From Monocercomonoides exilis PA203 (lineage: Eukaryota; Protista; Preaxostyla): 64,000 nucleotides of DNA. Position 1 is the first letter of the stretch, and every line of letters starts with the position of its first letter. Made by a program: the position numbers and the translations under genes. Under the pieces are notes generated by a model. The model made no database searches and was not told the origin of the DNA. It saw only the letters and a program-made list of their open reading frames with translations. Shown in pieces: positions 15,701-39,700 of this stretch. The stretch is from the NCBI GenBank assembly GCA_001643675.2, contig LSRY02000002.1, forward strand, positions 62,001 through 126,000, read 5' to 3'.

Positions 15701-18700
15701 TATTGCCTCCTGTTCTTTTTTATCCATTGAAGTCACACTTTCAAGAAGGTTTAGCTTTTGCCTGCTGCTTGTTGGCTCCTCTGTCAGCACATCAAAATCT
15801 CCTGAAGTTTCTTCTGTTTTGAAATCATCACACAAAACATTAACAGTTTCATCAGGGAAAACAGAAGATGCACTTCTCAGGAGCGTCTCGCACGCCTTTT
15901 CCATCCACCGGAGTGCATCTGTTACTGACACTTCGCATTCATCGCTGATGCTTCCGAGGCCGTTGTGCATGTGCGCATACAAAAGAGCAGTGTGTTTTGC
16001 AGCTTCCTTTATTGGCTTCAGAAGTTTCTGCAATATTTCCTCTCCCTTCAGCAGAAGTCGAAGTAAATTGTTCTCATTTGCAACGGACTTTTTCATCCTT
16101 GTGACGTCATTAAGAAACGATGCATCTTCAAGAAGAGCGTCTGCTGGCGCGTTTGTGAGACAGGACAGAATCATAGCTTCATTCTCTTGAAGATCAAGCA
16201 AAGTCACCGCAATGGCTTTTCTGGCAGATTGGAGAGCCTTGTGAAGAGAAGGTGCAAGGAGAGTTAGATAAGCTTTGAAGAAATACTCGGCAAGTCCATC
16301 AACCGACAATGTGAAGTCGACGATTCTTGTGCGTGAAGAAAGAGAAGGATGAGAAAGGACTGAAGCAGATGAGAGAGGATGAGTAAAAGGTGAACGAGCG
16401 GCAGATGGTCGTGAAACAACAAACAGACGAAGTGGTTGCGATTGGAGAAGTGCAGCTTTGGAAATTAGAGACGAAGCGTAAATAGGAGGAAGAATAGCAT
16501 CCGTGTCTTTCAGTTTGAAGAACTGGAGAGGATCAGAAGGCAAAGTTGTGGATGAAACAGTTGAGGAGAATTGAGAAGACGTTGAAAAGGAACTAGACCC
16601 AGCCGAAGAAGGAACAGTTATTGAGAAAGATTCCATTTCAGAAGAACCAGACAGAAGTGGCAACAGCAACGAGGGAGGCTGGCCATCCCCATCGCATGTC
16701 ACAACAGTTGTCCCTCCGTTGTGTGCTGAATGAGAAATAGCAGCTGCAAAACGAGGATGCTGAGTGGAAATGAAAAGAGGCTTTGCTGACCGGGGGATAG
16801 AAGATCGGAGCCATTTCAACCCAATCGAAAGAGGATCAAGAAGGAACGGGAAAGAAGGAGCAAATGAAGCACATAGAGCTGATTCAATCACATGCCTATC
16901 TGGCAATAAGCCTTGTCCTACAAAAAGGGATTCAATCACTCCATCAGGTGAGAGTTCGTGAATAAGAGAGAAGGATGTTGTTGAAGTTGTTGTATCGTAT
17001 GGAGGAGGAATTGGAAATGGCACTGGAGTTAACGATGATATATAAGTTGGATGAGTGTCTTGCGATAAAATTGAACCCGAAAAACTTGATTGGGAATCAT
17101 CATCAATCAGCATCTCTTCCAATTCGTTCAAAGTAATTGCCATTGTCATCAATTTGTGATCAGTCCTGAAATCGTCATCAACATATGGATCAAAGTATTC
17201 TTCGACTTCCTCACTAATTCCAGCTTCCGTGTCATTTCCTAACTCGTCTTCTGAATCATCTTCAATGTGCCTTTCATTTTCATTTTGAATTGATGTGGAT
17301 GATTCTGATTGAAGCAACTTTCCTTCGTTTTCTTGCTTTCGAAACATTTCTCTCAACTTTTCTTTTTGAGATCTTTTTTCCTTTTGAACCAACAATTTTG
17401 ATCGAATTTCGATCCATTTGCGTGCTCTGACACCAGAAGCACCACCAGACTCTCTTGCAATCTGCTCCATTTCTTCTTTTATGCTGTTGGCTTCTTCCAA
17501 AATACACCCTTTGACATCTTCATTGCGAAGAATGCAGCCATCCCTTCTTCTTTGCCTCAAAACATCTTCTATTCTATTCATCAGAATATCTCTTTCCTTC
17601 TCTCCGAATTGCGATCCATACACAACACCAGCTGCTGCTATCACACATCTCCATGGAACAGTACGCAATTCTTGTTTTGCTCTCCGAACAGACACAGTCC
17701 ACTTCTTCTTTTCTTCGTTGAGAGATTTCATTGCCTTTCCAGCCGCTTTCAGTCTCTTTTTGGTTTCTGCAAGAACTCTTTGGGCTTCGCGAGATCGGGC
17801 CATGTCAGCCTCATATCGATCGCTAAGAGCGCGAATACGTGCTTCGATCTCTCGCAATCTACCACGCTTCTTTTCCAGCTCTGCTCGTGCTCTTTCGAGT
17901 TGAGTTTTTGCATCGTCTGCCGCTTTCTGCAATGGAAGCACATTTTTAAGCGCATCACGGTACTTCACAATTGCCTTTGTCCAGACGCATAACGAGGCTG
18001 CTGCGGTGGAAATTTTCTGGATCATTTCTGGAACATACTTCTTCCCCTTTTCTGTAATGTATCTCTTCAACCACATAATAGTCTGCTCTGAAAGAGTATC
18101 CTTTGATTGAAGTAGTCTTTGTCTGAAATCACGCTGTCCAAGCAGATTCTTCGCAGAGCTCCATCCAATGTCACAATCCATCACGGGACAGATCGCATCC
18201 ATCACAAGCAACACTCCTTCAGGTGGACGCACATACGAACGCATCTCATCGATGTCCCTCTGCTCAATCGCATTAACAGCCTCTTCTGCTTCGCGCAGTG
18301 GTGGAAGCGCTTTTTCTAACTCCGCAGTTGCCAGATCCCCAAGACGTTGCTGTTCCTGTGCTTGCTCAGCTATTTTAGCTTCTTCCTTCGATAGAACTTG
18401 CTGTTCAGCAGACGCTGTTTGCTTCTCTATGCTGATCTGCTCCAAAAGAGTGGCAAGTGCATCTGCTTCTTTTTGTTGCTGAGGTGCTGCTGCTGCCAAT
18501 GTTCTCCTGAGTGTGTCAACAGACTCAGTTGCCTCTGCCAGCTTTTTCAGTCCAGATGCCCATCTGGTGATGTTTGTTCGAAGCGTGTGAGTGCGCAGGC
18601 GGGAGAGATAAGAATAGAGTCGAATGAAGAGAAGAAGCGAAGAATGAGGAATCTGATGAGGAGACGAAGGATAAGCTGATAAGTCAAATGGCAATTCTGA

Positions 18701-21700
18701 TTCTATTGTTCTTGATGACGCAAGCGACGAATGAATTTGCTGTGCAAATTGAACTGCAACAAGATGCAAGTTAGCAAAAAGAATAGGAAGAACGGTGAAA
18801 GATTCTTCTAATGCTGAATCTTTGAGAGGATTTCCTCCAAACAATCCTTCTGGAGCAATAAGAATGGTCGAAGCAGGTGCTTCAATTTGTTGTTCTGTTG
18901 TGTCTGCAACAGACAATGAGACTTTTGATGAAGAACTTGTTGGTTCTTTCTGTGTGGGAATCTCTTTCAGGTAGCTTTTAGCAGACTTAAATCCAGAACA
19001 CCACGTTGTCCCACCACAAAGCACAAAATGCTTTGATGCTAAATCAATCCAAAAATCAATGGGATATGGATGTGTGGTGATAAACTGCGACTGAGAAACA
19101 AGAGATGGAGAAAGATGGACACATAAGTTTTGTAAAGTTGACACTGAAACCAAAGATGAAGCAGATGCTTCTTCTTGTGTAGTTGAAACTGAATGAGTTG
19201 TTTGAGATGCTTCGTGTGATGGAGTTTCAAGCAAGGAAGATGAAAATATCGAAGAAACAGGAGCAATATGACTGAATTGAACGTTTCCGGTGCTCATTTC
19301 ATTGAGAATTGGTAGACAAAGAGCAATTCTAAGGTTTTCTTTGACTCTTTCTGCAAAGAAGTTCAGCGCATCTTGCTTTGATATTCGGATGGATGTTAAT
19401 GCAGCAAGCATTTGACGTTCTTCGTCAATCGCATCTTCGTCTTCGTCAATCACTTCACCTTCTTTTGTGTCGTTTTCCCAATCGTCTTCATTGAGTTGCA
19501 TTTCGTGTCTGCCTTTTGTCGACTTTCCACCAGAATCTGCTCCTTTTTTCTTTCCTTCGTTCTTTCCTCCATCTTTGTCCTCTTTTCGCTCTTTTCCGTT
19601 GTGCCTCGATGGATCCATTTGATTTTCCAATTTGCTATTGCCTTCTTCATCTCCCTTCTCGTCAAACACTTTCTCTCCTTGTGGCTCTTCGACAAGATTT
19701 TGCAATGACTCATCAATCTGTTGCGATTCCTCTGGATCTTCATAAAACAGTTCTTGTTCTTCTTCTTCATCATCGCTCTGATCATCTACTCCATTTCCTG
19801 CGCTTCTTCTTGCTCCGCTGCTAATGCTTGAATCTTTGTTGAATAGATAATATTCCGCATAGCTCGTTGAATCCATGCTGCCAGCAGTACCTGGTCGTGA
19901 ATTCACATTCGATCCTTGTCCACTTTTCCCATTTCCTTTTTGCCCTCCTTTATTCTTCTTTCCTTTGCCTTTGTTTCTCTTTCCATACATTCGTGCATTC
20001 TCTTCCTCGATATGTTGTATTTTATGCTTGTATAACTCGCCAACGCAGTCCTCTGCCGTTTTCTTAACCGCCTTGAAGATAAACTGCTCGTCATCGGATG
20101 AAAACAGCCCAGTAACATAGCCAGTCTTCAACAATGTACCCAAAATAGGCAATGCAGAACGAAAGATGGCAGAAAGATGAGCTTCATTCAAACAGAATAC
20201 AACTGGTGTCATTGGCGTTGAAGATGGACCAAAAAGTGAAGAAAGAGGCAAATTGTTTGGATTCGTGAAGAAGAAGTTGGACGATGAAGCTGACGTTGTT
20301 GAATTTGCGGAGGATAAATTCGCAAATGAAGTTGCACCAAATCCAATTCTTGAAGACTGAGAAAGCATTCCCTTTGATTTCTCTTTTGCTGTTCCTTTCG
20401 TGTTGCCTTTCGTCTTAACTGTTTCGATGCTTCTCTTCACCTCTTCGCTTCTTTCCACTGCCACATCCCACTGCTTTTCAATCTGTGGAGGAATAAGTTC
20501 CAACCCGCATCCAGCTCTCAGCATTGCTCTTTTCAAATCAAACAGGAATTCGTCCATTCCATAATGGAACGATGGAAGAGGTGTCATAAAGTTGAAGCCC
20601 AGAAGAGCAGCTGCTATATGTGCTTGAGTTGTTCGCCCGCTCAGTGCATCTCCCATCACAACAGCAGATGTTGAAGATAATGCTACCATCATTTTGGCAA
20701 TTGTGCGAGTGAATTGGTCGGTAAAGATGACTGGAGATGGAAGTGAATGTGTTTGCGAATAGAACGTATTCTGCATCGAGTTTGGTAAACAAAGAGAAAT
20801 ATATGAACGGGAGACCAAAGGAGGAGAATCAAGTTCAAAGGAAGAAGATGATGATAAGCTTGTGGACGAGCTCATAGACTTCAATGCAGACTCAATGGCA
20901 TGTGAAAGCTGCCTTAAATCTTTGATGCCTCTAACACGAGAAAGTGGAGAAAGTGTTACAATTGTATCTGGAACAGCAGTAATTCCACTAAATGAAGCTG
21001 AAGATGAATTTGAAGTTTGGGTTGGCAAAACAGAAGGAATTAGAGAAAACAGGAATTTGTCAAATGGAGACTGAAGCCAGCTTTTCAGAGGCACAAGTTC
21101 TTCAACGTCTGCAGGTATTCTCATCAGCTCATTCTCCTTTCCAACTGACGAAGAAGACATCATTGCTAAGACACTTTCTTCTCCTCCATCATCTTTTTCT
21201 CCAAAGCCACCAATTGCACCCATCTGTTCATTCATTGCATCTCCGCTTAGCAGATTTGACAGTTCAGCAGAAACAGCCACTGCATTGAAACGACCCTGAA
21301 GCAAAGATCCCATAAAGTTAATAAGCGCCTTGCGCTGTTGAGTTGATGTGAGTGAATCGCCCAGCACTCTCAAAACAGAATGTGACCAGATTCGCAAAGT
21401 GTCTGATGACAAAGTATCTTGAGTGGTGTCAAACAATGCTAATTTCGTAGAATTTTCTGGGAATGTTGGAGTTGAAGATGGAGCAACTGTCTGAATTAGA
21501 CTTGTTTGAGAAAGAGCACCCTGAACAAAGGTGGCATTTGATGGATGACGTGAATGAGCAGGTGTCACTGGACGTGATGCTTGTGTGACAAGACTTGACG
21601 TAGAAGGAGATCTCATCATTGATGAAGCATCTCCTTTTGCAGCAAGAAGGGAATAGTGGTTGCCCATCGGAGTTAGTACTGCTGAAGAAGAGCTGCTCGA

Positions 21701-24700
21701 TGATTCGAAAGAGAAAGTCTCCAACTTCACCCCCAAAAGAGGATGTTGAAAGGCAGATGGCAAAAAGAACACCTGGAGACTTTGTTGTGTTTGTCTTGAT
21801 GTTGAAGAAGGTGTATCTGGAGAAGACGAAAAGAGATTTTGAGAAGAAATTGCTTTCGTCATAGAACTTATAGCAACAGATGTAAGTGATGGTGAAGGAG
21901 AGTTAGATGATCTGAGCTTGCTGTGTGATCCTTGTCTTATTAGCGTAGACGATGATGATGAGCCCAATGGAGATGGTACAAACGCCACAGAAGACATCGA
22001 CGATGCAGTAAGCGGAGCCTGCATTCCGAAGCGAGTTCCCACTGTGCTGCCCAAAGGCGATACTCTGGAACTAAAAGTGGATGTTGGAGAAATTGCACTA
22101 TATAGAGGCGATGAAACTGAAGGAAAGAGTGAAGATGATGATGAAGATGATAGCAAAGTTGAACTATCCATTGAAGGTGGGTCAAGAGAAGGAAATCCGA
22201 TGAGAGTGGCATCGCTAACTTTGAAGGCAATCAGAATTCCTTTCATCACACGAATCACATCATGCAGATTAAACACAAATGGAAGAGGCATCGAAGAGCT
22301 TGCTGAAGAAAACAACGAAGATTCTCCAACCTTTCCGCCAATTCTATCGCTTCCTCCACTTACTCCGCCTTTTCCGCCAGATCCGCTGTTTCTGTCTCCT
22401 CCAAGTTTGTTTGTGCCCATCGCTGCAAGTAGACACACGGTGCAGTCGACAAGCTGAGAAAGCATTTTTGGCAATCGCATCACATCCGCTGCAGCTGACA
22501 CGATCTTCCCCTGAACAAGCGCAGAGATTAGAGCTGGAACAACAATGGCAGCTGCTTCTGAGCCAGTGAGTGCATCAACATGGTAACTCATCCAAAAACG
22601 TCCGAGCCTTCGAGACATTTGATGTGGACCGCTTCCTCCACCCAATCGTTGCAAACCATTCTTTGATATAAATGAATTCGGATTCTCCTTCATCATCGAA
22701 TGCTTCCATGTTGCTGGTGTCATCTGAGCAACACGCTGACGTGTTCCACCAAAACCAGCAAACGGCTTCGAGAAGTTAGATGAGATTGTATTGCGCTTCA
22801 TTCTTGTTGTACTCATCGAAGGAGATCCTGCTTCAGATGAAGATGAAGAAGAGCCAGAAAGACGAGAAAGAGCAGGACTTGACGGTTGACTTTTAGCTGC
22901 ATTTTTTGGGTCAAGCTTGTCGTTTTCTTCCTCGTCTGTATTCTCTGCAAGTTCATCAATTGGAAGAGCAGACGAATGACAAGCTGCGAAAAACGAAACA
23001 CCTCCAACAGTTCGAGGCAAAGGCGATGAAAAATCGTAGAAAGTTCGTGTTTCAAGCAGCATTCTAAGTAACTCTGTTAAATGAGGCCCATTCACAAATG
23101 GCTGGAACGGTGTTGATGAAGAAGAATTGGGAATGGATTGACACATCAGCGCGTACTCGAAATTGTCCAATGCAACAGGCATGGAACCTTGCTTTGCTCT
23201 GGACAAAGGCGGACAAAAAGGAGCAGAGGCATTCAGAGAAGAAGCCAAAGACATTTGAGAAAAACCGCTGTCTGTCAAATATGCCCTATTTCGGATGAAC
23301 ACAGGAAGGGACGAATCAGATGGAAGAATGGGCATTCCAGAAAGTTGCCCAACAAATCGGCTTAAAAACCCATTTCTTCCCAAAACAAGTTGATTGATTG
23401 GCGAGTCAAATGAATAATACAACGGAGTGGTAAAATCAGAAGGATGTGTAACAATCTCATATGGCGTTTTCTTCTTGCTGCCGTTTTTCTTTTGCTTTTT
23501 GCTTTTCTTTTCGTTTCTTTCCTCTTCGCCAAGATTGCCCATTCTCTCTTCCGAAGTTGATTGGCTCTTTCCAGAATCATTCTGATAATCGAATCCACTC
23601 CAACCCCATTTTCCTGAAGCCCATTTGTGCAGAACAACTTTTAAAGCAGTGGTCTTTCCGATGCTGCTTCCATCCAACAAAACATTAACTCCTCCACACA
23701 AAAGTGGAGCAAGCACTTTTGTTGCAGCATCTGTAAGCTTCGTGGTTTGCACATAAGAAGTCCGCGACATTGGCTCCAGTTCTGATTCGGTGGCATTGCA
23801 CAACTGAACAGACGGATCTGATGTCTCGTCCATCTGCGACAGCGCTCCATAAAATGGTTTGTGAAGCCTTGAAAACTTGTACACAACATCTGTAACCAGA
23901 GGAGGTTCTTCAATTTCTTTCTCTTTCTCTTTTCCGTTCTCTTGTGTCGAATCTGAAGCAGCTTTATCTTCTGAAGTTTCTGAAGATGTAGTTGTTTGCT
24001 GTGAAGTTGCACTAGGAGAGGTAGAAGAACGAGGCGTTGTGTAAGAATTCGATCTATCTGTTTTATTTGATGTTTTTGATTTATCTTTGTTTTCTTCAGC
24101 TTTTGGCTCCGAGCTCTGCTGCATTACAGATGGATCCTGCAGTTCTAAAAGTGATAAGGTCAGCTTCTTTTGTTTCTTTGAAGTCGCAGGATTAGCTTCA
24201 GCAAGCGCCTGTGCAAATGACGAAATTGAGCGCGATCCTCCTTTGTTGATAAGTCTCTGCTGAACCTGATAGAAGTTGAGAGGAACACGTTTCGGCTGAA
24301 TGAAAAGCGAAAATATTGATGTTCTTTGAGGAAGCGAACGAACAATGGATGGAATTCTGCAGTTCATTGCATCGACAACAAGAGACGAGAAAGCATCTTT
24401 CACATCGCTGCCTATCAATGCAGATCCAAATGACCAGACAACACAAAATAAAAAGTATGAGTCAACAAGACGAGTAATTCGATTTTGAACAGCTGTCTGC
24501 CTTAAATCCATCGAAAGATAGGAATTGACTGTTGTTTCAGATGAACCCAAAGGCAAATTTGTTGTGTGCTTGAAACCTTTGAAAATGCCTCGATATCTCA
24601 CAAGAGTACCGTATTCTTCTGTGAATTTTGTTGAAATATTTTCAGTTTGAGGTGAAGATTTCTCTTTCATTTCATTTTCTGCTTCAATCACGCTGTCCAA

Positions 24701-27700
24701 ACTGAATACCAGAGGTGCCCGTTGAGCATCGCTTTCATAAGGAAGTGTCAGCCCCAAGTCGACTAATCCTCCGCCTGCACGTTCTCCGCATCTTTCCAAA
24801 AATACTGTAAGCATCGCACAGAACGTCTCGACTCGAGCAAAGTCTCCAGTGTTGTGTGAGAGACATGCCTTTGGCAATCCAACAAGAGACGGATAAGGCG
24901 CATCTTTTATGTCCCATGGCCTGTTTTTAGGTGACGGAATGAACGTATTGGAATTCGCAAGTGAAGCAGCTGAAGAAGTCAAATGGGGTGGAGTGCCAAT
25001 TCCCAGACTACTTTGATTCCTGATTCTTCTGCTTTGATATGAGCGAGCTGATTCCAACACTCCGTTGTCGTCTATTCGACTGAAGCCAACAGAAAGTGGA
25101 GTGCCAGTAAGGCTTCCTCTTCGAGTGAGTGGTGGCCTTCCTTCTCTTCGTGTTGACAGCAGATCGTATTGGCTATTCCTTGAAAAATCATTTGAGCCTG
25201 CTCCATTTTTGTTTTTCTCGGACTCAAAAATATCATCCTCTTCAGCATGTACCATCTCATCTTCTGGCGTAAGAACTTTGCTCCGTCCATTTAAGTATGC
25301 AAGAAGAAGAGGGAATAAATATGAAATATGCTTCCAAATACGTTGTCGTATCCAAAGAGAAACTCTTTCCTCGTCGTTAAGTGCAGAATACTCTGGTAGT
25401 TCGTTCAACGAATTAAGGATTGCCTTTGCAGAAGAGTCAGATGCAAATGATGGAACAGAACCTTCTGCGTTGGCTGGCCTCAATTGATCCTCTGATTGAG
25501 AAGTGCTGCCAGAAGAAGATGATTGCAAAGAAGCATCTTGAGAAGCAGCTTTTGCAGGATCGTTCGATGAATCAAAGCCGAGCAAGTCATCTTGTTTTCT
25601 CGAAGCTTGCTCGTCTGCTTCTTCTTCTTCTTCTTCAACAGGAATTTCATTGTCTGCTTCGTTGTGCATAAGCAGAAGTGACGAAGATTGTCCCATCGCT
25701 TTCAAACGCATTCTGTTCTCAAACTTTGCATCCAATTTTGCCAAGCTCTGTTCTTTGTCTGTTTTGTCTTTTATCCACTCCGCAATATCGCATGGAAGTA
25801 AAGGTTGCGGTTTTTCGTCTTCACCGTCTATCAGTTGCAGCCACGAGCGAACAAAAGATCGCCACTCGACACACGCCCTTCGACATTGGCCATTCGATGG
25901 ACTAATCATACCTCCACATCCGCTGCCACTCCCGTTGACTGCTTCCACTTCGTAATCTTCAGTCGATTTCGTGTTCAAGCAGTCGTCGCTTGTGTTATTG
26001 CTCAGCAATTTGTTGACAACATCTCCAGAAGCTGTAACCTGATCTGGTTGTTGTGCGATAAATGTTCCTCCTGACTGACGCTGGGCAGCCAAAGGCTCAG
26101 TATCTTCACTGATGGATATCATAGCGGTTGTGGATGATGTTTGCTGAGAAGAATCTCCATTGTTTGCCAATCTATCTGCTCCCAAGCCAAATCCTGTGAT
26201 TGCACATTTCTTTGGAGGAATTGAACATTGATTCACATCAGCCATATGAGAAAGCGAAATTAATACGCCTGCATCTGACTGTTTGCCATTAATGTTATCA
26301 TTTGCTGATCTGCCACCAGCATTCAAACTGTTTGAAGTAGCATGCTCCAGTTCTTGTGATGTAGCAGCCAATGCAGGTGGATTTGACTTTGATGAACCAT
26401 CAGAAGATGAAACAGAACCCGAGGTCATTGAGTTGACGGAAGATGAGATAGACAAAGAAGATCTTTTTTGCAAAGTTGGCTTTTCTTGATTTGCTGCCAA
26501 AGGAGAAGGGCATGGTGATAATTTCGACGCTGAAGATTGTCTTGTCAGCAAACCTGTCTTTTGTTTGGACGAATGAGAAATAAGAAGTTTTGACTTAACT
26601 TCTTCTCCATTGGGAACATAAACAAGTCCTGTTCGAGAGAGAAGCGAAGGTGATGCTGACTGAAGTGTGTCTGTTTCAAAGATAAAACAGACACCATCAG
26701 GAATCATCAAGCGACGAGATGATTGGAGCGTCACTGCAGGTAAAGAGGAGGAAAACGCTGAAGCAAATGACGAAGAAGACGGAACAGGAGTTGTTGGGGT
26801 GTTAAACGATGAGGACATCGAAGATGACTCGTTTGCGGATACTTTCATGGCAGACAATGGTGGTTGAGAAATTGGGGGCACAAAAGTTGAAGTCAGCGAA
26901 ATCAATCTTGCAGCCCAGCTGTCTTCAATTGGCGAGTCAAAGATTATCCAGTGTGAGCGTGGTGGTGCAGGAGGGACAGGAAGAATAACTTGCTCTTCTT
27001 CTCCTTCAGCAGCAGTTGCTGTCATTTGTGCCGAAGTGCTATCGTTTCTTCCTACATCATCAACTCGAGAAATTTGCTCTAAAATCATTGCTGTTGCTGG
27101 ATTAGCATCTGAGGCATCAGAATCAGAAGATGCCATCGCAGCTTCCACTTGCTTTTGTTTGTGAATTGTGGAAATTGTGATGTTCTTCATTTTTTGTAAT
27201 GCAGCTTCCAATTCTTGTCGGTATTGTTCTCGCTGCTTCAGGTAGTTTTCTCGTTCCTCAGCAATTGAATCGAGCAGTTCTGGAAGCACACCAACAATTG
27301 GCCTATCTGTGGTGCAGTCATTAAACGGAATATACACTCTTCGACTCTCTTTCCCTGAAACGTCATCAAACGTGCTGTCTCTTCCTATTCCTCGATCCTC
27401 TCCACTTCTCCTGTCGTCTCCCCCTTCATTCAACATCCCTTGACTTCCTCTTGAATCTCCACTTGATTCAGATGCATCTAAATTTGAGTTGCCAAACAGC
27501 CCTCTTTCCCCAAGTGCAAGTGGATTTATGTAGTGGAGAACAACTTGTGTGCCAAACGCAACACGAGGCACAGAAACTGGAAGAAGTTTAGACAGCGCTG
27601 TTGGATGCCGATGGAACGCAGATTTCAGTCCTTCATTTCCTTCCATTTCGAATGTTTTATCCATTTCACTTAACTTTCCATTTGCACTGGATGAATCACC

Positions 27701-30700
27701 TTCATCATTCAAGTCATCACTTCCATGACTGTTTTCATTTTCATCATGTTGTTCATCGACATTTCGCCCAAATGCAGAACTGTATTGCTCATTCTTTTTA
27801 CCTTTTCTTTGATCATTCAAATCGCTTGGCTCGTTCAAAGGAAGAGATAAGCATTGAGCCAGAAGACGAATGATGCTTGTCTTTCCAGAAGCTGCCCCGC
27901 CCAACACAACTGCAACAGGCGATGCGAGCAAAATCGAAAAAAGTGTTGCAGCGCATTCCAACTGCTTCTGGACAGCTTTGCCACGCCAGAAAAGACCCAG
28001 CATGCGAAGAGAAAGGCGGAGACGATCGTCCAAATATGGTGTCAGCAAGGGAAGTGAAGAAAGAGCTGGAGAAGTCGAAGGATTCTGCGAAGTTGTTTCA
28101 TTTTGAGATGCATTTGCACTTGATGACTGAGGAGGAACAAGCAAACTGGAAATGATGTTGGTTTCGTATCTCTGTTCAGCTGGTATTGCTTCTAAAGCCA
28201 TCGATATGAAACGGATAAGTTGCTCTCGATTAAGTCTCGTCTTCATCTCAACGGCAATTGCATGAATCAGGTCTTCTCTTTCTGCTTTTAGTTTCTCTTG
28301 TACGTGCGTTGCCAAATAATAAATTTCTTCATCAACTTCTTTCATTCGGAGGAGTTGCAATTGTTCGACTTGTTTTGGTTGCATTCTCTTTCTCTTTTTC
28401 AATTGGTTCTGGGATACAATTGAAACAGCTTCATTGACAATGAGCCTTGTCCATTTAGCTCTTCTTTCTTCGGTCATTCTCTGCTCTTCAATAAACCTTT
28501 GCTGAGCAAAAGCACTGCAGCGTGCAATAACTGAAAGAAGAACAGAAAGGGAAAACGCAGAAGGAGGGATGAGTCCGTTGAGTGAGAAGACAGATGCAGC
28601 AGAATGGAAAAGAGATAGAAGTCGAGGAGCATACAACTGCGGATTGGAGAATCCTGCTTTGAGAAGAGCAACCGACAATACAGCAGAAGGATGAGGCGTT
28701 GCAAGAGTCACTGGTCGCAGAAAATCAGTCAAAGATGAAGGCAAAACAAATGGAGGAGCAGAAATAAGAGCAGTTCGAGACGGAGTCATGTTGTTCTCGA
28801 GAGATGCTGATCGGCCAAACGAGGCAGATTCTAATGCAACAAAGCCAAGTGGAGAGGGTGTCATCCATGTTTTCTGTGATGGAATGCTGACCTTTTTCCC
28901 GTCGATTGTAACATTACGTGAATGAAGAAGCATGGCGTTGCTAATCAAAGTTAGCTGAGATGAAAGAGCCGAAAGAGCAGAAGAAGAGAAAGATGACAAA
29001 CCATCAATGCATCCGATGACTGATGAAGAGTTCATCAAAAGTCCAGCAATGAAAGATGAAATAGAATTAGAGCTGATGTTAGATGAAGCATTTAGAGAGA
29101 CGAAAAAGGCACCGAGCGTTCGTGAGAAATCTGAGACAAATGCAGATGAAATGGAAGAAGACGATGAGACAAATACGCCGAGATTAGGCGAAGATGATGA
29201 AAGCGACTGAAGCAGAGAAGAATATGATGATGAAGAAGAATCTGAGTTTGAGGAAGATCCAAAGGCATGCATCAAAGGTGTAAACAGCCTTCTGTCAGAA
29301 ACATGTGGAATTGGCATGAACAAGGGCTCGTTTGATAGATATTCATAGCCATAGCGGAACACATCATCGCCGCACACAATCTGCAAGGAGTCTTCTTCGC
29401 TATTCCAGACATAGCGAGGAAAATGAAATGCTGATGGATGAGGCATTTGAAAGACTTCAGACGTATAAGATGAAATTGGAGAAGATAATTCGTGTGAAAA
29501 AGAAGTTGAAGCTGAATCGCTCATGTTGAAGACAGGAAGAACTTCAACTGGATTTATCTGGAAATTCAGAGAGTTTGGATCATCGTACCAATGCGAAAAG
29601 CTTCCTATGTCTTTTTGTTTGTTTTCCAACCGTCCTGTTATTACAGCATTCCTCAAGCATGTCAGAAGTTGTTTCTTATCATCGCTTTTGACCCCAATTT
29701 GATCTGTTGACGAAACTTTCTTTTCGTGTTTTAAGGCAAGTTGTGAGAAGGCACCGACTGAATTAATCAGAGCAATCACTTTGTCCGTGCTGGCTGTGTT
29801 TCCAGAAGAACTTTTTGTGCTTCCACCTGAAGCCAATCCTTCAACACAACCAGAAGAGCTTATGCCCAGCTCTTGAAACGACATCTGATAGCAGTCATCA
29901 ATCACATCTCCTGTGATGTCTCTATGGCAGATTTCTGAGCTGATAAGAGAAGCTACCAATTGTGTTAGATGATGAGGATGATGAGGACGAAGGCGCAAAC
30001 GCCTGCTGAGCCATGTTATTCTGTTTATAACTCCTTTTTTCAGTAAGTTCAAAGATTTGACAGTTGTGTCTAATCGAGTTGTAGCGATTGCGTGGATCAT
30101 TTGAGCTTGTTGTGATTTTGATGACCCACCTTCATTCCTTCCATTTCGTGTTTGCGTTCTGGAGGTGGATAAATTTGACGAACCAATTGTTTCAGAAAGA
30201 GTGTCAAACTTCCCTGCATTTGATGGATTGTTGACAATTGACGAATCCAGATCAATGGCTGATGCAACATTGCTTGATCCAAACTGAGACGTGTTTGGGC
30301 GTGATGCACAAAGCGATGTCCGAGAAATTGGTTGAGTGAATATTCCATGTGATTCTATCTCTGTTTGGATGAGTGCTTCATCGAATGACTTCCATTGGGT
30401 TAGAGCTTCGTCCAGCGCCAATGAGTAATACACTTCTGTTGCAGCCAGTACAATCTGCGAAGGAAAAGAAGACAAATAAGCCCATTGATAAGACAGACGA
30501 GACTCTGCAATAGTATGTGTTCCAGTAAGATTAGCAGGCATGATCTGGTGCAAATTATTCTTTTGTTGTGAATACGAAGAAGACAGTGAATCTGTGGGGG
30601 TTGTTGTGCCTCGTTTAGCCAAAATAGAAGCTGCATTCTGAGAGACGCGTGCTGATGGAAACTCAGATGGAATGTATTTTGTGGATAATGAAGCATCTTT

Positions 30701-33700
30701 CAAATGCTTTTCTCTTTCTGCTCCTTTCATCAGCATCAAGCTCACTCGCTCCTTTGGCACAGAAGCTGCATAGTGCACAAAATCTTCAATTACGTCAGAA
30801 ACTGGCGGTGCATGTTGCATCGACTGGTTGATGGCATCTGATTCCAGCGGCGAGGAAGAAGAGAGTGGCTTTGCAGACACAAAGAAAGGCGATAAAGGAG
30901 AGCATGAAAGAAACGAAGCCGGATGAATTGGAGTAGAAATGTTGCTCACGCTTGTTCCAGGAAAGCGATGAAATAGAGGAAACTCTTCAATGGCTCTGCG
31001 AGAGAGCATTTTGAGCTCCTTTTGAGAAGTCTTGAGGATGTCAGAGAGAACAACATCAGCTGTTGATTGCACACGAACAATTGAAGAAGAGAAGAAAAGT
31101 AATTCGTCATCAGCATTTACAACTCCGTTGATGCTGTCACCAAATCTGCTTGTTCTAACAAGTGTGTTGATGAATGACAGTGCACCAGTTGATGCAGCTT
31201 GTCTTTGAGTTGTTGGCGTTGTTGGAACAGCTGGCGATGTCGGAGTTGTTGTGGCTGTTGCAACAGTTTGCTTTGTCTGCATTGGAACAAGAGGATTTGG
31301 ATGTCCTGATGCAAACGATGGAAGCTTGTTCGTTTTTGCAGTAATTTGATTTAAAAGTCGTTCTGCGTGCCAAACTGAAGCAATGTTGTTGTTGGATAAA
31401 GAAAGCTGTCCTGTTGAAGCAGAAGACAAACTATTTGGTGTGCGTACCTCCTGTTGAAGCGACTGTAACGTTGTTGAAACTTTCGATGAAATCGCCAATG
31501 AACGTATCCCAGCAAACAGATAAGGGAAGTATCGATATAAATTCTGTACATTCCCTCCAAACGTAATAACTTTCGCCAAGTCTGAGTCGGAAATGAAGCA
31601 AAAACGAGGAAAAGAAGCACGCCGTGAGTCGAGAAAAGCAGAAAGAGCGGCTTTTGCTTTTGTCAAGCGGTTAATCCACAGAGCAAGCAGATCATAAGTG
31701 AGTGAAGGCACTTTCGAATCTCGTTCTCTCCACGCAGTGACAATTGCAGGAGATGGATGTAAATATCGAACTATTGGTGCTCTCACAATTGACTCAACGA
31801 GATCGACAAATTTCATATCAATTTCTCGAAATTGAATACGTGATGTTTGAAGGTTTAAAATTATTTGTGCGTTTTCTCTTGATTGTGAAGTCAACGATGA
31901 GGCAGTTTGAGTGAGAGAAGAGGAAGATGATCCGCTTAAAACAGACAGAACATCTTCCAAAGAAGAAAAAACAGGGCATAATTCGAGCCACAGCGACTGA
32001 ACCTGCGAAATGCGAGTGATAATTTTGCGAAAAGCATCCAAAAGCTCCTTCCATCTGTTGATATGATCCTGCACAGCAGCTCGGTGAGGAGACGAAGAAA
32101 TTGCAGTCAGTTGCAATTCGCTGTCTTCGAGAAGAGACAGCAACGAATCAACTGGAGCAATCAAGAGCATCTGACTTGTCTGTGATGACGAAAGAGATGA
32201 TGATCCATCATAATTGCCTCCTGTTTTCTTTCCTTCATGTGTCTTGTCCGAGCTTCCGTCCTTTGTTCGTGCTCTTGAATAGGATGATGAAGAGGAGGCA
32301 GAAGATGATGACAGAGAAGCATCATCATCTCTTCGCTTGACAGTCGTCCTCACAAATGAAAACGATGCCCGTGACCATGTTTGATCCAATCGGCGGAGTT
32401 CTGCTTCCAGTGCATATTCTGCATCAGCAGCCTGCGCAATCGCCTGAAGCTGCTGAACATGATCGAGAAGCCCTCCGTTCACCAGCTCTCCCACCGTCGT
32501 CTCGTTTGTCATCACAATGTTGAGCACTTGGTTGATCAGCTGTCTGTGCCTTTCTCTCAGAGTATGTCTTGTGAGGATGCTAAGACAAGGGACAGATGCA
32601 ATCATCAGAGCAGTCTGACTGTTAAGTGAGGCAGGTGCAGTTGAGAGTGGATGTGCTGCTTGTACTTGAATCAATGATTTTGACACAGAGTCGAGCTTTG
32701 TCTTGAGGCGGTGGAGTCTCAATCCTCCCAGGCGGGTCATTTCCACAGACTGTGCAAAGAGATCCCAGTTTTTGATGAGCAGCCACATTCTCTGAAGAGA
32801 CTTCCATCCGAATTTCACTCTCTCCAGCAGCTTCTCTTCCTGCACAGGCTCTGCTCGTTCCAACAAAACAGCAAAGTTTTTGTAGAGCAGAAGCTCAGCT
32901 GAAAGAGACTCGAGAATTATTCCTCTGTCAATCAATCTGTTGTGAGCACGGGCAGAAAACGATTTGAATCTGTCTGTCTGAAACAATCGTGCAAAACATT
33001 CTGATCTCTTTTTCAGATTCTTCAGCGCAATGGCAGCAGACGTCAAAGGCTCTGTTTTCTTTTCTCTTGGCGTTGGAGGATTTGATGATTCAGGTGTCTG
33101 CGATTCATTGGGAGAGCCAGCATATGAATTTGCAGTACTTTGGGAAGTTGAAGTTGCTTGATGCCTGTAATTTGTTGGATAAGGCTGTATTTCGAATATG
33201 TCTTGTGGTTCAAAACGAATTGGTGGCGGATCTTCATTAAAAACGGTATCACCTGGCTGCATTAGCCCTTCTGTCAGATCGCAAAGCTGAGAAGAATGCA
33301 AATCTTCTTCGACTGCAAGAACTTTTCTTCTGAAAGCTTGCAGACGCTGCTCGTACACTCCGAGCCATGTGGCCACGAGATCAGCCTTTGACTGAGTAAA
33401 TTTCGTGAGTGCAGTCTGGAAACGCGTCATCTGCTGGTCGACTTTGTCCAGCATGTGGAGATACGAATTCACTCCTTCATTTCGTGCTGTCATTGAAGAT
33501 GGCATCGGAGATGAAGACGCACTTAGAGATGTCGGAGTAGTTGGCATTGCAGCTGAAGAAGATGTAAGTGGTGGAATGCCCGCTCCGCCTTCAGATTGTG
33601 AGTCATTCAGCTGCTTCATCAGTTCTGGATATCTTTCTCCAAAGATAATCCAGTCAACGTTTTTCACTCTTCGTTCTCTTTGCTTCTTCTCCTCGGCCAG

Positions 33701-36700
33701 CCTCTTTTCAAGGTGCATCTTTGTCCTTTTCTTTCTGTTGAAAATTAGCGACACAACCAATCCGTAGCGAATGTCCGTATCTGGTTCACTATCTTCATCT
33801 TCGTCCAATGAATCATCATCGTTATTCGAATCATTTTCTCCCTTTGTTTCTGGTTTCTCTCCTCTCTTTGCAGCAGCTAATGCTGCGCTTTTCTTCTTCT
33901 CTCTTTCTTTCCTTTTTGCAGCACGCTTAGCTTTCTCTTTGCTCTTCAGGAAGAGTGAGGTTGTGTTCACAGGAAGTTGCAACTCGTGTGGAGGTCGTGT
34001 GATGTGGCTCAGATCCAATGAGAAGTCAACACACAACGCATCCAGTGCAACAATTCTCTTGTGCGCTTTGAGCATCGCCTCTCCATCTTCATTGGCTGTT
34101 GTTAGCGCAGCAAGAGCAGCACAACATGAAGGAAGCGAAGAGACCATTGCTGACAGTCGCTGTATGTGAATCTCCAGCCACACGGCTAACGATTCACATA
34201 AGGAAACGACAACTTCTGGAATGCGTTGCTCCAATGCAATTCGTGCCTTATTGACGAATGGAAGTGATGCAGCAACAAATGGACGCAGATCGAGACGAAA
34301 GCATCCGACGCTGATGAGCCTTGCCAGCGAAGAAATGGCCAAACTGTCTTCTCTCATTCGAGTGAGAGTCCGACGGAACACTTTTGACGAAGGTGGGGCT
34401 GTCTCGTTCGAACTGGACTGAGTAATCTTCTGATAAGGAAGCTGAGAAAGTGCAGAAGAAAAAGGATACGATGCAGAAAGTGGATGAGTTCGTTCAACTT
34501 CCACCGGAAACACAGCGCTGTCAAGTGCAGAAGAGATGGCATAAGTTTGTGGAAGAGGAAAGTCGAAGCGTGAAATGTCGAAGTGGACGTAGTGCGTCGC
34601 CAGGTCATAGCTTTTCGACAAAACTGCGTTAAACTGGCGGATAGTTGCATAGCTGTCCTGCACAAGAGAAAGGCAGCGCAGACGCATGTTGTCTGTCAAA
34701 AGGCCAATCTGAAGGCGATCTTGCTCAGCAAGCGAAGAAGAAGACGAGGACGAAAAAGAAGAATGGTGAGAAGTGAATGCACGTGTTCCAAGTGCGCCAA
34801 ATGGCGAAGATTTGAGTAGTGATACAACACTTGGGTGTGTCATAAGATTGGGGAGAGAATTGCAAATAGAAGTGATGTCTTCGAATATTTGATTAATTAG
34901 GAACATTATGAAGTCCTCCGATGGATCAAATGTGATCCCTTTCTTTGTGAGCGACACAGCAATTGTTGTTGCCGGCGGAGTGAAGTTGAGACGAGACAAA
35001 ACAGGCCACACTTCAACTCTGCTCAGAAGCGTGGTCGGAAGATCAGACGAATCGTACGGGCGAAATTTGAATGTTGAGGATGCTGTGAAAATGATAAAAA
35101 CATCAAAGAAAAAAAATATTAATCAAAAAAATTAATCAAGATTGAAAAGGATCAAACCAGCAATTGAGCCAAATTGAGACAAAAACCCAGAATTTGCAGA
35201 AGAAGTCACAGAAGAAATGCTAAAAGAAGCTGATAGCATTTTTGAAAGTGCATCATTTGCTGCAGCTGCCGCGGCAGATGAATAGTTCGAGTAAGAAGCC
35301 TGAAGATAAAGAGACGAGGCAGATGGCATGCGAGATTCCAGGACACGCCCAGGCAAAGCAGAAAGAGGGGAAGGAAAAAGAAACAACGGCTGATTCATTT
35401 TTTCTGGTGGAATATGTTTTATTTGAGGGAGAAGTCCAACATTTGAGGAAATAATACGAGTTTCAGGATTAGTCGTGGATTGTTGCGTTGTTGCAGGGTG
35501 AGTTTGAATCTTTGAAGGTGTCAAAAGTGCCTGTGCAGCAAAGTCCTTTCTATCTTTCGACCCGCCAATCTTCTTTGTTTCGTCTTCTTCTTCTTCTCCC
35601 TCTGCTTTCATTACATCGCTTAGTATCTTTTCTTCAAGCTCCTTCTTTTTAGCTGCTCGGCGTGATTTGATAGCTTCGTGTGCGAGTGTGCGTATTATTT
35701 GGTTTTGCTCTTCTAATTTCAGCTTTTTCGAGGTGTGTGACTGCGCAGCAAGTGCAGCTGCAGAAGGCGCAGATGAAGAAGCTGCCTTGGCAGAAGAAGA
35801 GGAAGATGAAGCTGAAGAACTTGCTGCAGATTGGTTCGTTCCAGAAACAGACAAATCTCCAGCACCACTTCCTGAATCTCCACCTCCACCGCTACCGCCT
35901 TCTCCTTGTCCTTCTCTCCACACATTCAAATACTTTTGTATTTCCTCCTCCTCATCTGGTGTCACCCGCACCCACACCATCGACGCCAGCTTCACCCACA
36001 TCGGAGGGAAGTGGTGCATCTGCAGTGCCAGCGTGCGAGGCTGAGACAAAGCTATCGTTGTTTTGTCTGTCCCGCCTGATAAGGACGAAGAAGAGTTTTG
36101 AGCAGAAAGCGCATTTGACATCGCTTGCATCCCTGAATGTGTATTCGGCTCTTCCTCTGTGTCATTCCCCATTCCATACGCAAATTTCTCTTCATTCTCC
36201 TCGTTGCTCATGTTCAGACCGTTTGTTTTTCCACTCATTTTCCCGGCTTCGATTCCCATCATCTCCTTCTGCAGCCTCTGGTAGTATTCTCGAATCTTCT
36301 TTGGTTTGTCTCCAAGCTCATCTCGAAACCCGAAATCGTCGTCGAGAAGCGGATCTCCAAAGCGATAAAAAGCAGGCGATGTCTCACTTGGCGATGAAGA
36401 GAGGAGAAAATGGGGCATAAATGGATGCACCACAAACGGCCTTGAATTGGATGGTGTGAAATGTGAGGGTGGAAGTGTACTTTGTTGATTCTGCGACTGA
36501 AGCCTGTGATTGAATCGAAGGTAATTCTCTGGATTTGTTTTGTTCAGCTTCACCTTCAGTCTCTGTGCAATTTCAATTGAAGTCGGGAAAGAAAGCTCCT
36601 CTGAACGAGCAAACGAGGCACGACTTCTGTTTCGTGACTTTGTATTTGAATCGAAGCGGCGCACGCTTGAAAGTGTTGTTGGGGTTCCAGAGATTCTTGA

Positions 36701-39700
36701 CGGTGTCAAAGACTTTGACAGATGGTGTTTTCGACTGATTGAATGCCTCAATGTTCTCAAAGTGCGAGCTGAATCATAAGTTTCCTCGTTGTATTCCTTG
36801 TCTCTCTCGTCATCTGATTCATTCCCACCCGAAAGCTCATCATCAAATCCTTCGTTTTCTTTGTCCTTTGTCCATGCCCATGGAGCGTGTGCCCCAACAA
36901 ACTCGCCTCTCTCGTTTTCCTCCTCCCACTCTATCCGATGGGCCACAGAACGCGAGTCCATCCTCCACACAGCCTCTGCCTCTTCTTCTTGGTGTGTGTC
37001 TACGCCAAGTGCTCTGCAAATACACTTTCCACTTTCAACAGCCACAAAGCACAGCACAGACGAAACCATCTCATTCACCACTTTTATGAATGAGGCAAGC
37101 GTTTTGCCAATTTTTGCTCCTTCGTCTTCAGCTTGCTCATAGCGTTGTTCATCGTTTCCGCTTTTTCCGTCTTCCGTTCCACTTTCTTTCTTTTTGCTGT
37201 TTTTAATCCCCAACCCATCACGAATCACTGTTTGACCCGCCTTCAACATCACACTCATCACATCGTGCATAAACAGAGTAAGTTCATTTCCCCGCTGTGC
37301 CCTCACACGCGACTGCAAGTCTCCGAAGAGAAGAACAGGCGGTGCACGAAGTGTCAGTGCAGTGAATGCGTCGACAGGAGACAGAAACGCCACTTGAAGT
37401 GCAGAAAAGAGAGGAGGCAGTGGAAGAGCTGAAACTCCAGGTGCTGCTGTGTGGAAAGAGGTTGTGGAACTTGGCGAAGGAGACGCTGAAAGCTGCCTTT
37501 GCGACACTTGCGAGCGTTGTGTTGCCTGCGGAGTGGCAAAATGAGCAGCAAAGGATGAATTAAATCCAATCGAGCTTGAGCCGCTGGGAGTCATCCCTTC
37601 TCTCATTCCAAACTTTGCGTCGTTTCCTCTTCCGAGTGTGTTTCCAAGCTGAGAAATTGGCAGGTCAGTCAGAACTCTCTCAAACAAGCGAATGCGCGAT
37701 GCCTGTATGCAGCACCGTTTGATATGCAGCAGGGCATTCCGCAAAGGCGTCGATATAAACAGAAGTCTGCTGTCCACTCCCAAATGGCCTCGCCGATAAA
37801 CATGGCTGCTGATCAGCTTTTTCCACAGACCAAAATACTTCCTCAGCCGAAACTTGCTGAAAAATGACTTCTTTCGCAGTGCTTCGAATATCTTTTTCTC
37901 TTCAATCCACTGCGCAGTTGGTATCAGCTCTGTTGTTGTCTCTTTCCTTCTTGGAATGCCATCCACTCCTCCAACAACCTGTCCAGGAGAAGGCCCCTTG
38001 TCAACAACATGCATCAGCCCATTCACTGAGAGTGTGAAAAAGTCTCTGAAGTTGACGTCTTTCTCTTCGATGATCCGAAGAGTGTAGCTGTTTTGCTCCT
38101 TCTCCGCTGGATCGTAGCCCAAATAGACAAAATCATAGCTGTTTGGAGTCAGCGACTGATACGCCAGAAACGTCGATGGTGCTGCGAGATCGGCATGTGA
38201 CAGCAGAAGTGTCAATTCGGGTGGAACTGGGCGGACAGCGCGCGAGCGGAAGAGCGATGCAGAAGAAGCTGCAGAGGAAGAGGAGGAAGACATGCCAACA
38301 ATTTGTCGCGGCGTGGAGACTGTGAGACGAGGAGCAAAAGACGATGCAGTGGTGACAGTCGATGTTATAGAAGAAACAGATGCTGAAGATGAAGGCCTCT
38401 GAGGAGCAATCGAAGAAAGTGTGGAGAGCATAGAATTCTGTGTTCGAGCAGTTGACTGAGCAGAAGACGAGGTTGGACGCATGCCTTTGGAAGAGGCGCG
38501 AGCAGAGTGTTTAAGTGCTGTTGGTGTGGATGGCGTTGCTGTTGCAACATGTGTGTTGTTTGAGTCATTCAACTCAGAAGAAGCTGTTTGATGTGTTGGA
38601 GCTGATATGCTTGAAGAAGCAGGAGAGTTGCTTCTGTGTCTGGGAGAGGAAGAGCGAGAATGTTGAGAGCGTTTAGCGGGTGTTGGAGTTCTGAGAAGAG
38701 AAGAAGTTTTGCCAGACGGCTGTGAAGTGGACGAGAGGAGTGAAGTGGGCGAAGGAGGCAGAGCGGGAAGCGAAGTGGATTGGAGAGAGGATTCTGATGT
38801 GGATGAGAAGGACGAAGATGTTGCTGCTGAAGTGGCTGAAGTGGCGTGTGAAGTGGAGCGAGGTGTTGATGACTGAAATGGATGTGGTTGAGACAGATAA
38901 GATGAAGTGTCAGTGGAAGGTGCTGAGGAAGATGACTGGCTTTTGGCAATGAGATCGTCAATTCTGCTTTCTTCATTCCAAATTCCTTCAGATGATTCAG
39001 ACAGACTTTCCAGTCCATCGCTGCTGTTTTCTTTTCCTTTCTCGATTCTGCCATCTATCCCTTCTCTTTCGTTGTCTTTCTTCTTTTCCTCTGATTCTTC
39101 GTTTCCCTTCTTGCCTTGTGATTCCTCGCCACTGATGCTACCATGAGCTGAGCTGGGTCTGCTGGCAGTTCGCATCAAATGCCCGCTGCCTGCACTCTGC
39201 GGACGATGAAGTCGCAGGCCCTCCATTTTTGCCTGGTTTTCTTTCTCTTTCATCAAACGCAGCATTTCCCGCTCGCGTCTCTTCCGAATTGTCTGCTTGT
39301 TGACTTCTTCCTTCAAAATATATCCTGATTTTGTTTTTGTTCCTGTTTTAAGAAGAAGCTTGTCAAGCAGTGAAATATCATGCAAAGAAGACGTAAATAG
39401 ATCAGGGCGAGTAACCAGTGGTTTGAATGTTCCAGAAAATGATTGATCACTTGCTGGAAGTCTTTCAAATGAGAGATTCTTTTCTTTTTCTTCTGTGTCG
39501 GATGTCAATTCTGAAGATGTGAGAATGTTTAAAGGTGGAGAAAGTGAAGAACGATTAATAGAAGGAGAAAAGCCCAATGATGGCGAATCCGATTGAAAAG
39601 TCGGTGATTCTGAAAGAGGAGGTTGATCATAATTTGTGTTCTCCAGCTGCGTTGGTAGCGCATGTTGTTTTGTTTTGTCCTGCCTGCTCTGCCGCGAACT

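What the first reader, a model, noticed from the sequence alone, without database searches (positions are those of the whole stretch)
28700..29400. Dynein heavy chain with a destroyed AAA1 ATPase site: candidate 'dead-motor' dynein
Seen: after YGYEYL the AAA1 region reads LGVFVSSSSSISSAFVSDFSRTLGAFFVSLNAS...GCIDGLSSF. Known: canonical dyneins have GPAGTGKTE..KDL...LG..C.VFNCS and WGCFDEFNR here, and AAA1 is the essential hydrolytic site. The Walker A Lys and Walker B Glu are both gone while the surrounding spacing is kept. AAA2 (GGAASGKT, ~27880-27900) is intact, AAA3 (DGSSIGKT, ~23650-23675) and AAA4 (GDALSGRT, ~20630-20655) are altered, and the stalk/MTBD (~17950-18330) is the best-conserved part. 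The 33.6-kb frame is uninterrupted, which argues for purifying selection. Inference: a non-motile dynein used as a microtubule tether, cross-linker or regulator, for example in flagella or an axostyle-type bundle.
Basis: partly seen in the sequence, partly recalled or inferred. Interest (0 to 1): 0.85.

Follow-up and report, generated by a model that had tools for sequence, protein, structure and literature searches.

The report
Giant motor-dead, microtubule-gripping dynein
A gut protist without mitochondria carries an unbroken gene, present in RNA libraries, for an 11,200-residue dynein that has lost its ATP-burning site but has kept its microtubule-gripping tip better than any other part, so it probably acts as a passive strut between microtubules rather than as a motor.

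Summary
Confirmed. The gene (minus strand, 40438-6764, one 75-nt intron, about 11,200 aa) is in Monocercomonoides exilis and encodes a single-headed inner-arm dynein heavy chain, most like DNAH6. In AAA1, Walker A GPAGTGKT reads SSSSSISS, the Walker B Glu is Gly, and sensors I and II are lost, yet the AAA+ fold is still predicted. An RNA-library contig spans AAA1-AAA3 with no differences or skips. The Blattamonas orthologue (7,694 aa) has also lost AAA1, with different residues. Conservation is inverted: between the orthologues AAA1 is 28% identical and the microtubule-binding domain (MTBD) 72%; in 231 canonical pairs the means are 62% and 39%, and the MTBD never exceeds AAA1. Tail motif, linker, stalk length, buttress and the AAA2 nucleotide site are kept. 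Best reading: a non-motile cross-bridge that binds microtubules constitutively, in the flagellum or the axostyle (about 0.6; function inferred, not shown). Non-motile dyneins are known (DNAHX, DNHD1), but DNAHX still binds ATP and its stalk and MTBD are disrupted, the opposite pattern. New variant of a known kind. The scan noted similar dead dyneins on other contigs of this genome.

The parts
35158..40438 (-). Exon 1: ATG at 40438; Ser-rich N-terminal tail
   Evidence: the NCBI gene model ends at the same position
37685..38152 (-). Conserved tail motif of single-headed inner-arm (DNAH6-like) heavy chains
   Evidence: best PDB hits 8glv_Fm E 1.8e-8, then 9y6s_6z and DNAH6 at E about 1e-3; 43% identical to the Blattamonas orthologue
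35083..35157 (-). 75-nt GT..AG intron, 20% GC, holding the only two in-frame stops
   Evidence: orthologue similarity resumes at the start of exon 2; splice not tested on reads
6764..35082 (-). Exon 2: rest of tail, linker, AAA1-AAA6 region, stalk, C-sequence; stop at 6766-6764
   Evidence: 9,452-codon open frame from 35122; Pfam hits
31448..32950 (-). Neck and linker (DHC_N2), 45-48% identical to the orthologue
   Evidence: Pfam E 6.5e-45; best PDB hit DNAH6
28520..29353 (-). AAA1: fold kept, catalytic site destroyed
   Evidence: Pfam AAA_6 E 1.1e-11; alignment; model and Foldseek E about 1e-11 to dyneins
29144..29167 (-). AAA1 Walker A position: SSSSSISS for GPAGTGKT (Gly, Lys and Thr lost)
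28991..29014 (-). AAA1 Walker B: IDG for FDE (catalytic Glu replaced by Gly)
28811..28837 (-). AAA1 sensor I: ALESAS for TMNPGY (Asn replaced by Glu)
28535..28558 (-). AAA1 sensor II: AFSLS for DFGMR (Arg replaced by Ser)
27878..27901 (-). AAA2 Walker A GGAASGKT, intact (GGTASGKS in the orthologue)
26627..26653 (-). AAA2 arginine-finger motif SPSLLSRTG (faces AAA1); kept here, not found in the Blattamonas model
23651..23674 (-). AAA3 P-loop DGSSIGKT, one residue short in both orthologues, GKT kept
22595..22618 (-). AAA3 arginine-finger motif RRLGRF (RRFLRHF in the orthologue), which completes the AAA2 nucleotide site
   Evidence: matched to canonical PRFLRHF by eye
20630..20653 (-). AAA4 P-loop GDALSGRT (Lys replaced by Arg; GPPSSGKK in the orthologue)
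17570..18586 (-). Coiled-coil stalk of canonical length with MTBD (18274-17953); no flap and no large inserts
   Evidence: Pfam MT E 8e-28; DNAH6 E 5e-48; model pLDDT 92.5, TM 0.75-0.83 to the best solved stalks
15950..16354 (-). AAA5 region and buttress coiled coil, present
   Evidence: Pfam AAA_9 E 1e-11; alignment
7589..7957 (-). C-sequence (Dynein_C)
   Evidence: Pfam E 1.4e-9

Best explanation
A functional pseudo-ATPase dynein heavy chain derived from a single-headed inner-arm (probably IDAg/DNAH6-class) dynein. Shown: AAA1 has lost every residue that binds and hydrolyses ATP, and no other AAA module has a Walker B Glu, while tail motif, linker, buttress, stalk and MTBD are kept under selection in two oxymonad genera. 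Inferred: in dynein, ATP binding at AAA1 closes the ring, shifts the stalk registry through the buttress and releases the MTBD. Without it, the head should stay in the nucleotide-free, straight-linker, strongly bound state. The tail anchors the protein on one microtubule or scaffold and the MTBD grips a neighbour, giving a passive, ATP-insensitive cross-bridge or brake. AAA2, and possibly AAA3, still hold a structural nucleotide that stiffens the ring. The site is either the flagellar inner-arm row beside the N-DRC or the axostyle/preaxostyle bundle, at about even odds.
For: AAA1 motifs are lost in both orthologues with different residues (SSSSSISS here, about IQNDTIEG in Blattamonas), against 24 of 24 other aligned dyneins that keep them. 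Conservation is inverted: AAA1 28% and MTBD 72% between orthologues, against means of 62% and 39% in 231 canonical pairs, in none of which the MTBD exceeds AAA1. The stalk has canonical length and folds confidently. Linker 45-48% and AAA2 P-loop region 55% conserved. The exon-2 frame has no stop in 9,452 codons; 1% neutral divergence would leave it open with P about 2e-6. An RNA-library contig of 15,450 nt spans AAA1-AAA3 with no differences. Lineage control: another giant Blattamonas dynein (P0007, 6,996 aa) keeps GPSGVGKT and DE, so inflation alone does not erase AAA1. AAA1 is the main hydrolytic site and its mutation abolishes motility (PMC2533788). IDAg's linker contacts DRC3 of the N-DRC (PMC10266980), a non-motor reason to conserve the linker. 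Oxymonad axostyles carry dynein-like cross-bridges (PMC2114570).
Against: There is no localisation, proteomic or biochemical evidence. The rigor state is extrapolated from canonical dyneins (own knowledge); AAA1 and AAA5-AAA6 are so remodelled that the stalk registry could be set otherwise. A permanently bound bridge would resist doublet sliding in a beating flagellum. The dynein-like axostyle bridges described in motile axostyles respond to ATP, so they need not be this protein. Only two species could be compared, and the RNA evidence is contigs, which cannot exclude DNA.
Confidence: 0.6

Rival explanations
1. A non-motile assembly or regulatory partner like DNAHX: it pairs with active heavy chains (a phi-like, inhibited complex), or occupies docking sites to space or silence motors. 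The conserved stalk and MTBD serve protein contacts or transient binding rather than load bearing.
For: Precedent in DNAHX (bioRxiv 2025.01.18.633724): a long, insert-rich, AAA1-degenerate heavy chain in a heterodimer. Linker and tail are conserved here.
Against: DNAHX has stalk kinks and MTBD inserts predicted to abolish microtubule binding, whereas here the MTBD is the most conserved element and has no large insert. No DHC_N1 dimerisation-tail hit.
Confidence: 0.17
2. A nucleotide-gated clutch: no powerstroke, but ATP/ADP binding at the retained AAA2-AAA4 pockets switches the MTBD between strong and weak binding through the buttress and stalk.
For: The AAA2 Walker A, the AAA3 arginine finger, the AAA3 GKT and an AAA4 P-loop remnant are kept in both orthologues; the buttress is present.
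Against: In canonical dyneins the affinity switch is driven by AAA1. No module has a Walker B Glu. The AAA3 P-loop is one residue short and the AAA4 Lys is Arg here.
Confidence: 0.14
3. Still a motor, through unconventional chemistry or hydrolysis at another AAA site.
For: Linker, buttress, stalk and the AAA2 arginine finger that faces AAA1 are all present.
Against: AAA1 has lost the P-loop Gly, Lys and Thr, the Walker B Glu and both sensors; the replacements differ between orthologues (0 of 8 identical in the P-loop); there is no catalytic Glu elsewhere.
Confidence: 0.04
4. A decaying paralogue or pseudogene, or an assembly artefact.
For: Large Ser-rich inserts (15.5% Ser) and low identity over AAA5-AAA6 and the C-terminal part. 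One DNA run shows single-base deletions.
Against: The frame is open over 9,452 codons; the orthologue is collinear along most of its length; MTBD identity is 72%; three RNA runs show none of the deletions, which fit the homopolymer errors reported for the old 454 assembly.
Confidence: 0.03

Closest known systems
DNAH6 / Chlamydomonas dynein g (IDAg; DHC9 or IAD5 class of Kollmar 2016, PMC5100056)
   Same: DNAH6 is the best PDB hit for stalk (E 5e-48) and linker, and among the top hits for the tail motif; no MTBD flap; no DHC_N1; same domain order.
   Different: AAA1 is destroyed; about 11,200 aa against about 4,150 aa; the MTBD is more conserved than AAA1.
DNAHX (bioRxiv 10.1101/2025.01.18.633724)
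   Same: Non-motile heavy chain with a degenerate AAA1 and many inserts, maintained across species.
   Different: DNAHX derives from outer-arm alpha, is limited to some animals, is 5,272 aa, keeps Walker B and a bound ATP (pre-powerstroke lock), and has a disrupted stalk and MTBD. Here the P-loop is erased and the stalk and MTBD are canonical and the most conserved part; the predicted state is the opposite one (nucleotide-free, strongly bound).
DNHD1 (DHC11, orphan heavy chain)
   Same: Aberrant heavy chain once dismissed as a relic and now tied to cilia and flagella. The eel protein P0165 lacks the Walker B Glu.
   Different: Eel DNHD1 keeps an AAA1 P-loop (GPSTSGKT) and normal size (4,686 aa); animal lineage; stalk hit much weaker (E 6e-22).
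Blattamonas nauphoetae KAK2954747.1, 'putative dynein axonemal heavy chain 6' (P0001)
   Same: Orthologue: collinear, 53% identical in the stalk, 100% tree support, AAA1 also dead.
   Different: 7,694 aa, shorter inserts, other residues in the dead P-loop; automated name only, and I found no description of the lost ATPase site.

Membership tests
Dynein heavy chain | Tail, linker, AAA ring, stalk/MTBD between AAA4 and AAA5, and C-sequence, in that order | tested here: met
   Pfam DHC_N2, AAA_6, lid, AAA_8, MT, AAA_9 and Dynein_C in order; AAA2 and AAA3 by alignment; AAA6 had no profile hit
Active dynein motor | AAA1 Walker A GxxGxGKT | tested here: not met
   SSSSSISS
Active dynein motor | AAA1 Walker B DE, sensor I Asn, sensor II Arg | tested here: not met
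   DG, Glu and Ser respectively
Active dynein motor | Microtubule-stimulated ATPase and motility | not testable with these tools
   needs biochemistry
Single-headed inner-arm dyneins | Groups with single-headed IADs; no DHC_N1 tail | tested here: met
   linker+stalk tree, SH-aLRT 96, quick search with a single outgroup; no PF08385 hit
DHC9 / DNAH6 / IDAg class | Class-like tail motif and flapless MTBD; best hits | tested here: met
DHC9 / DNAH6 / IDAg class | Monophyly with DNAH6/14 in a motor-domain tree | tested here: inconclusive
   long stem (1.4-1.7 changes per column); placed outside the DNAH6/14 group with weak support; no AU test run
DHC9 / DNAH6 / IDAg class | Docks at the IDAg site of the 96-nm repeat | not testable with these tools
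   needs cryo-ET or localisation
DNAHX | Origin from outer-arm alpha; animal distribution | tested here: not met
   inner-arm best hits, oxymonad host
DNAHX | Stalk and MTBD disrupted by inserts | tested here: not met
   canonical length, pLDDT 92.5
DNHD1 (DHC11) | Groups with DNHD1 | tested here: not met
   eel DNHD1 is a weak hit and falls elsewhere in the stalk tree, on a long branch

The most novel reading that the evidence does not exclude
Oxymonads turned inner-arm dyneins into a family of giant, ATP-independent structural cross-linkers, of which this DNAH6-like protein is one. They form the passive bridges of the axostyle, the group's hallmark microtubule bundle, whose linker proteins I did not find identified in the papers searched.
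Probability: 0.25. Interest if true: 0.85.

Novelty: new variant of a known kind. Interest (0 to 1): 0.64.

Why it matters
Dynein's AAA1 site is nearly invariant across eukaryotes (24 of 24 other aligned sequences). A heavy chain that discards it while keeping the microtubule-binding tip above all other parts is a natural experiment in using the dynein scaffold as a static linker, the mirror image of DNAHX. It gives a testable molecular candidate for the microtubule bridges of the oxymonad axostyle, seen by electron microscopy since the 1970s, or for a passive inter-doublet brake in flagella. It also warns that dynein inventories of oxymonads built on domain hits may count dead motors as active ones.

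Tried and rejected
dN/dS was not possible: the Blattamonas CDS could not be fetched (protein over the 5,000-aa limit); it would probably be saturated anyway. A third oxymonad orthologue was not found: the word search on the linker gave nothing, the stalk searches gave only P0001, and the metagenome scan gave one unrelated flap-bearing dynein (L006); these searches are length-limited or cluster-collapsed, so this is not absence. I could not test whether M. exilis also keeps an active DNAH6-class gene: no supplement of PMC6759080 is held, and the paper says only that the axonemal set is nearly complete. A hidden intron or alternative splice restoring AAA1 was rejected: no AT-rich intron candidate in exon 2, and RNA contigs are collinear across 23650-29600; the listed joints have sides of only 20-21 letters at a Ser-codon repeat. 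Trees did not resolve the class. Alignment A2 held a junk 10-aa row and was replaced by A3. Searches stopped on slips and were rerun. Literature searches found no paper on dead oxymonad dyneins.

Full report
Source and gene. The actin gene beside the locus maps the window to assembly GCA_001643675.2, contig LSRY02000002.1; the fetched locus is identical to the window. That accession is the Monocercomonoides exilis assembly (PMC8767320). The dynein gene runs on the minus strand from ATG 40438 to a stop at 6766-6764. The only stops (35134, 35125) lie in a 75-nt, 20% GC, GT..AG intron at 35157-35083, which gives a 33,600-nt CDS and 11,199 aa; the NCBI model starts at the same place and has 11,184 aa. 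I searched the exons separately and did not join them. Pfam finds DHC_N2, AAA_6, lid, AAA_8, MT, AAA_9 and Dynein_C in canonical order. The extra 7,000 or so residues are largely low-complexity inserts (15.5% Ser in exon 2).

AAA1. An alignment with 25 other heavy chains fixes the register: GPAGTGKT corresponds to SSSSSISS (29167-29144), FDE to IDG, the sensor I Asn to Glu and the sensor II Arg to Ser. Of 26 rows, 24 have both Walker motifs; the two exceptions are this protein and its Blattamonas orthologue. An AlphaFold model (mean pLDDT 64, core 80-94) keeps strand 1, loop and helix where the P-loop should be, and Foldseek returns dyneins at E about 1e-11. The model was built on an alignment of canonical domains, so it shows compatibility with the fold, not proof of it. 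The domain thus survives as a scaffold with an empty active site.

Other sites. The AAA2 Walker A is intact in both orthologues, and so is the AAA3 arginine-finger motif that completes that pocket. AAA3 keeps GKT in a loop one residue short in both. AAA4 has GRT here and GKK in Blattamonas. No module has a Walker B Glu at the catalytic position. The arginine finger facing AAA1 is still present here (26653-26627), and so is the buttress.

Not an artefact. Four RNA and four DNA runs from two studies hold the stretch. One RNA-library contig of 15,450 nt spans 23650-29600 with no differences or gaps; two more RNA runs tile it with no differences. Single-base deletions appear only in one DNA run and fit the homopolymer errors reported for the 454 data. 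Contigs cannot prove transcription. The culture metatranscriptome described in PMC12308965 was DNase-treated, but I cannot tie the coded runs to that study with certainty.

Not a pseudogene. The exon-2 frame has 9,452 codons without a stop, while the other two frames have 4.1-4.6% stops; 1% neutral divergence would give about 13 stops. The orthologue KAK2954747.1 of Blattamonas nauphoetae (7,694 aa) is collinear from the tail to the AAA6 region and groups with this protein at 100%. Its AAA1 is also dead, with different residues, so the loss most simply predates the split of the two genera and the site has drifted since. The central result is the inversion of conservation: orthologue identity is 28% in the AAA1 core and 72% in the MTBD, whereas 231 pairs of canonical heavy chains average 62% and 39%, and none has the MTBD above AAA1 (the pairs are not independent of each other). 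Linker (45-48%), coiled coils (44-47%) and the AAA2 P-loop region (55%) lie in between. The stalk has canonical length, both boundary prolines and no flap, folds at pLDDT 92.5 and superposes on solved stalks (TM up to 0.83). As a control, a second giant Blattamonas dynein (P0007, 6,996 aa) keeps its Walker A and B: size inflation occurs in the lineage without loss of these motifs.

Ancestry. Stalk and linker hit DNAH6 first; the tail motif hits the Chlamydomonas chain 8glv_Fm first (probably dynein g, my inference), then a Leishmania chain and DNAH6. A linker+stalk tree places the pair with single-headed inner-arm dyneins (SH-aLRT 96) on a long stem, but not securely in the DNAH6/14 group. DNAH6-class origin is likely but not proven.

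Mechanism. Shown: no catalytic machinery; selection on MTBD, stalk, linker, tail motif and the AAA2 pocket. Established: AAA1 is the main hydrolytic site and its mutation abolishes motility (PMC2533788); ATP binding at AAA1 is what releases the MTBD (own knowledge). Inferred: the head sits in a nucleotide-free, strongly bound state and works as a passive bridge or brake between microtubules (0.6). For a flagellar site: the class-like tail motif, and a conserved linker, which in IDAg contacts DRC3 of the N-DRC (PMC10266980). For the axostyle: oxymonads have this bundle (PMC6759080), motile axostyles carry dynein-like bridges as well as passive links (PMC2114570), and permanent rigor would hinder a beating flagellum. 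Rivals are a DNAHX-like assembly or regulatory partner (0.17), a clutch gated by AAA2-AAA4 (0.14), an unconventional motor (0.04) and decay or artefact (0.03).

Comparison and novelty. Non-motile heavy chains are known: DNAHX and probably DNHD1; Kollmar 2016 lists 216 sequences in new classes or as orphans without analysing their ATP sites. DNAHX keeps Walker B and a bound ATP and has a disrupted stalk and MTBD; eel DNHD1 keeps a P-loop and lacks the Glu. This protein differs in having the P-loop erased, a canonical and highly conserved MTBD, single-headed inner-arm ancestry and about 2.5 times normal length. I found no paper describing it or dead oxymonad dyneins; the library is incomplete. 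An unrelated normal-spaced dynein with a deleted AAA1 P-loop also turned up in a metagenome (P0029), so such losses recur. Earlier notes of this scan report several similar giant dead dyneins on other contigs of this genome; I did not check them and have not scored on them. Verdict: real, most likely functional, a new variant of a known kind; interest 0.64.

Noticed in passing
window 41167-43576 and 44409-46815: Two nucleotide-identical actin genes (41398-42531 +, 45451-46584 -) form the arms of an inverted repeat of about 2.4 kb (93-99% complementary) around an 832-nt spacer, head to head with the dynein gene: recent inverted duplication or gene conversion.
   Followed up: partly
window 401-5818 (-): ORF of about 1,750 aa with a PPDK_N ATP-grasp domain (E 5e-28) stretched by inserts; also noted by the scan (s1-466563).
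   Followed up: no
window 47362-55086 (-): ORF of about 2,575-2,604 aa, Ser/Glu-rich, no Pfam hit.
   Followed up: no
window 56148-63998 (+): ORF of more than 2,600 codons running off the window, with extreme GC skew (0.5-0.66) from 58 kb on and no significant Pfam hit.
   Followed up: no
P0001 residues about 3230-3265: The Blattamonas orthologue lacks the second half of AAA2, including the arginine finger (about 350 aa of the M. exilis protein have no counterpart): a real deletion or a mis-called intron in its gene model.
   Followed up: partly
L007 43-8115 (P0029, JGI sample 3300034010): Partial dynein heavy chain of normal spacing from an unidentified organism whose AAA1 P-loop is deleted and Walker B lost; not in the oxymonad clade by similarity. 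An independent dead-motor dynein.
   Followed up: partly
window 6764-40438: The NCBI model is 15 aa shorter (11,184) than my one-intron model (11,199); a further 45-nt intron may be annotated. It is not in 23650-29600; candidates were listed but not resolved.
   Followed up: partly
P0007 (Blattamonas, 6,996 aa): Giant DNAH1-like chain with intact AAA1 Walker A and B but an altered sensor I (FEP for MNP); possibly an intermediate stage of decay.
   Followed up: partly
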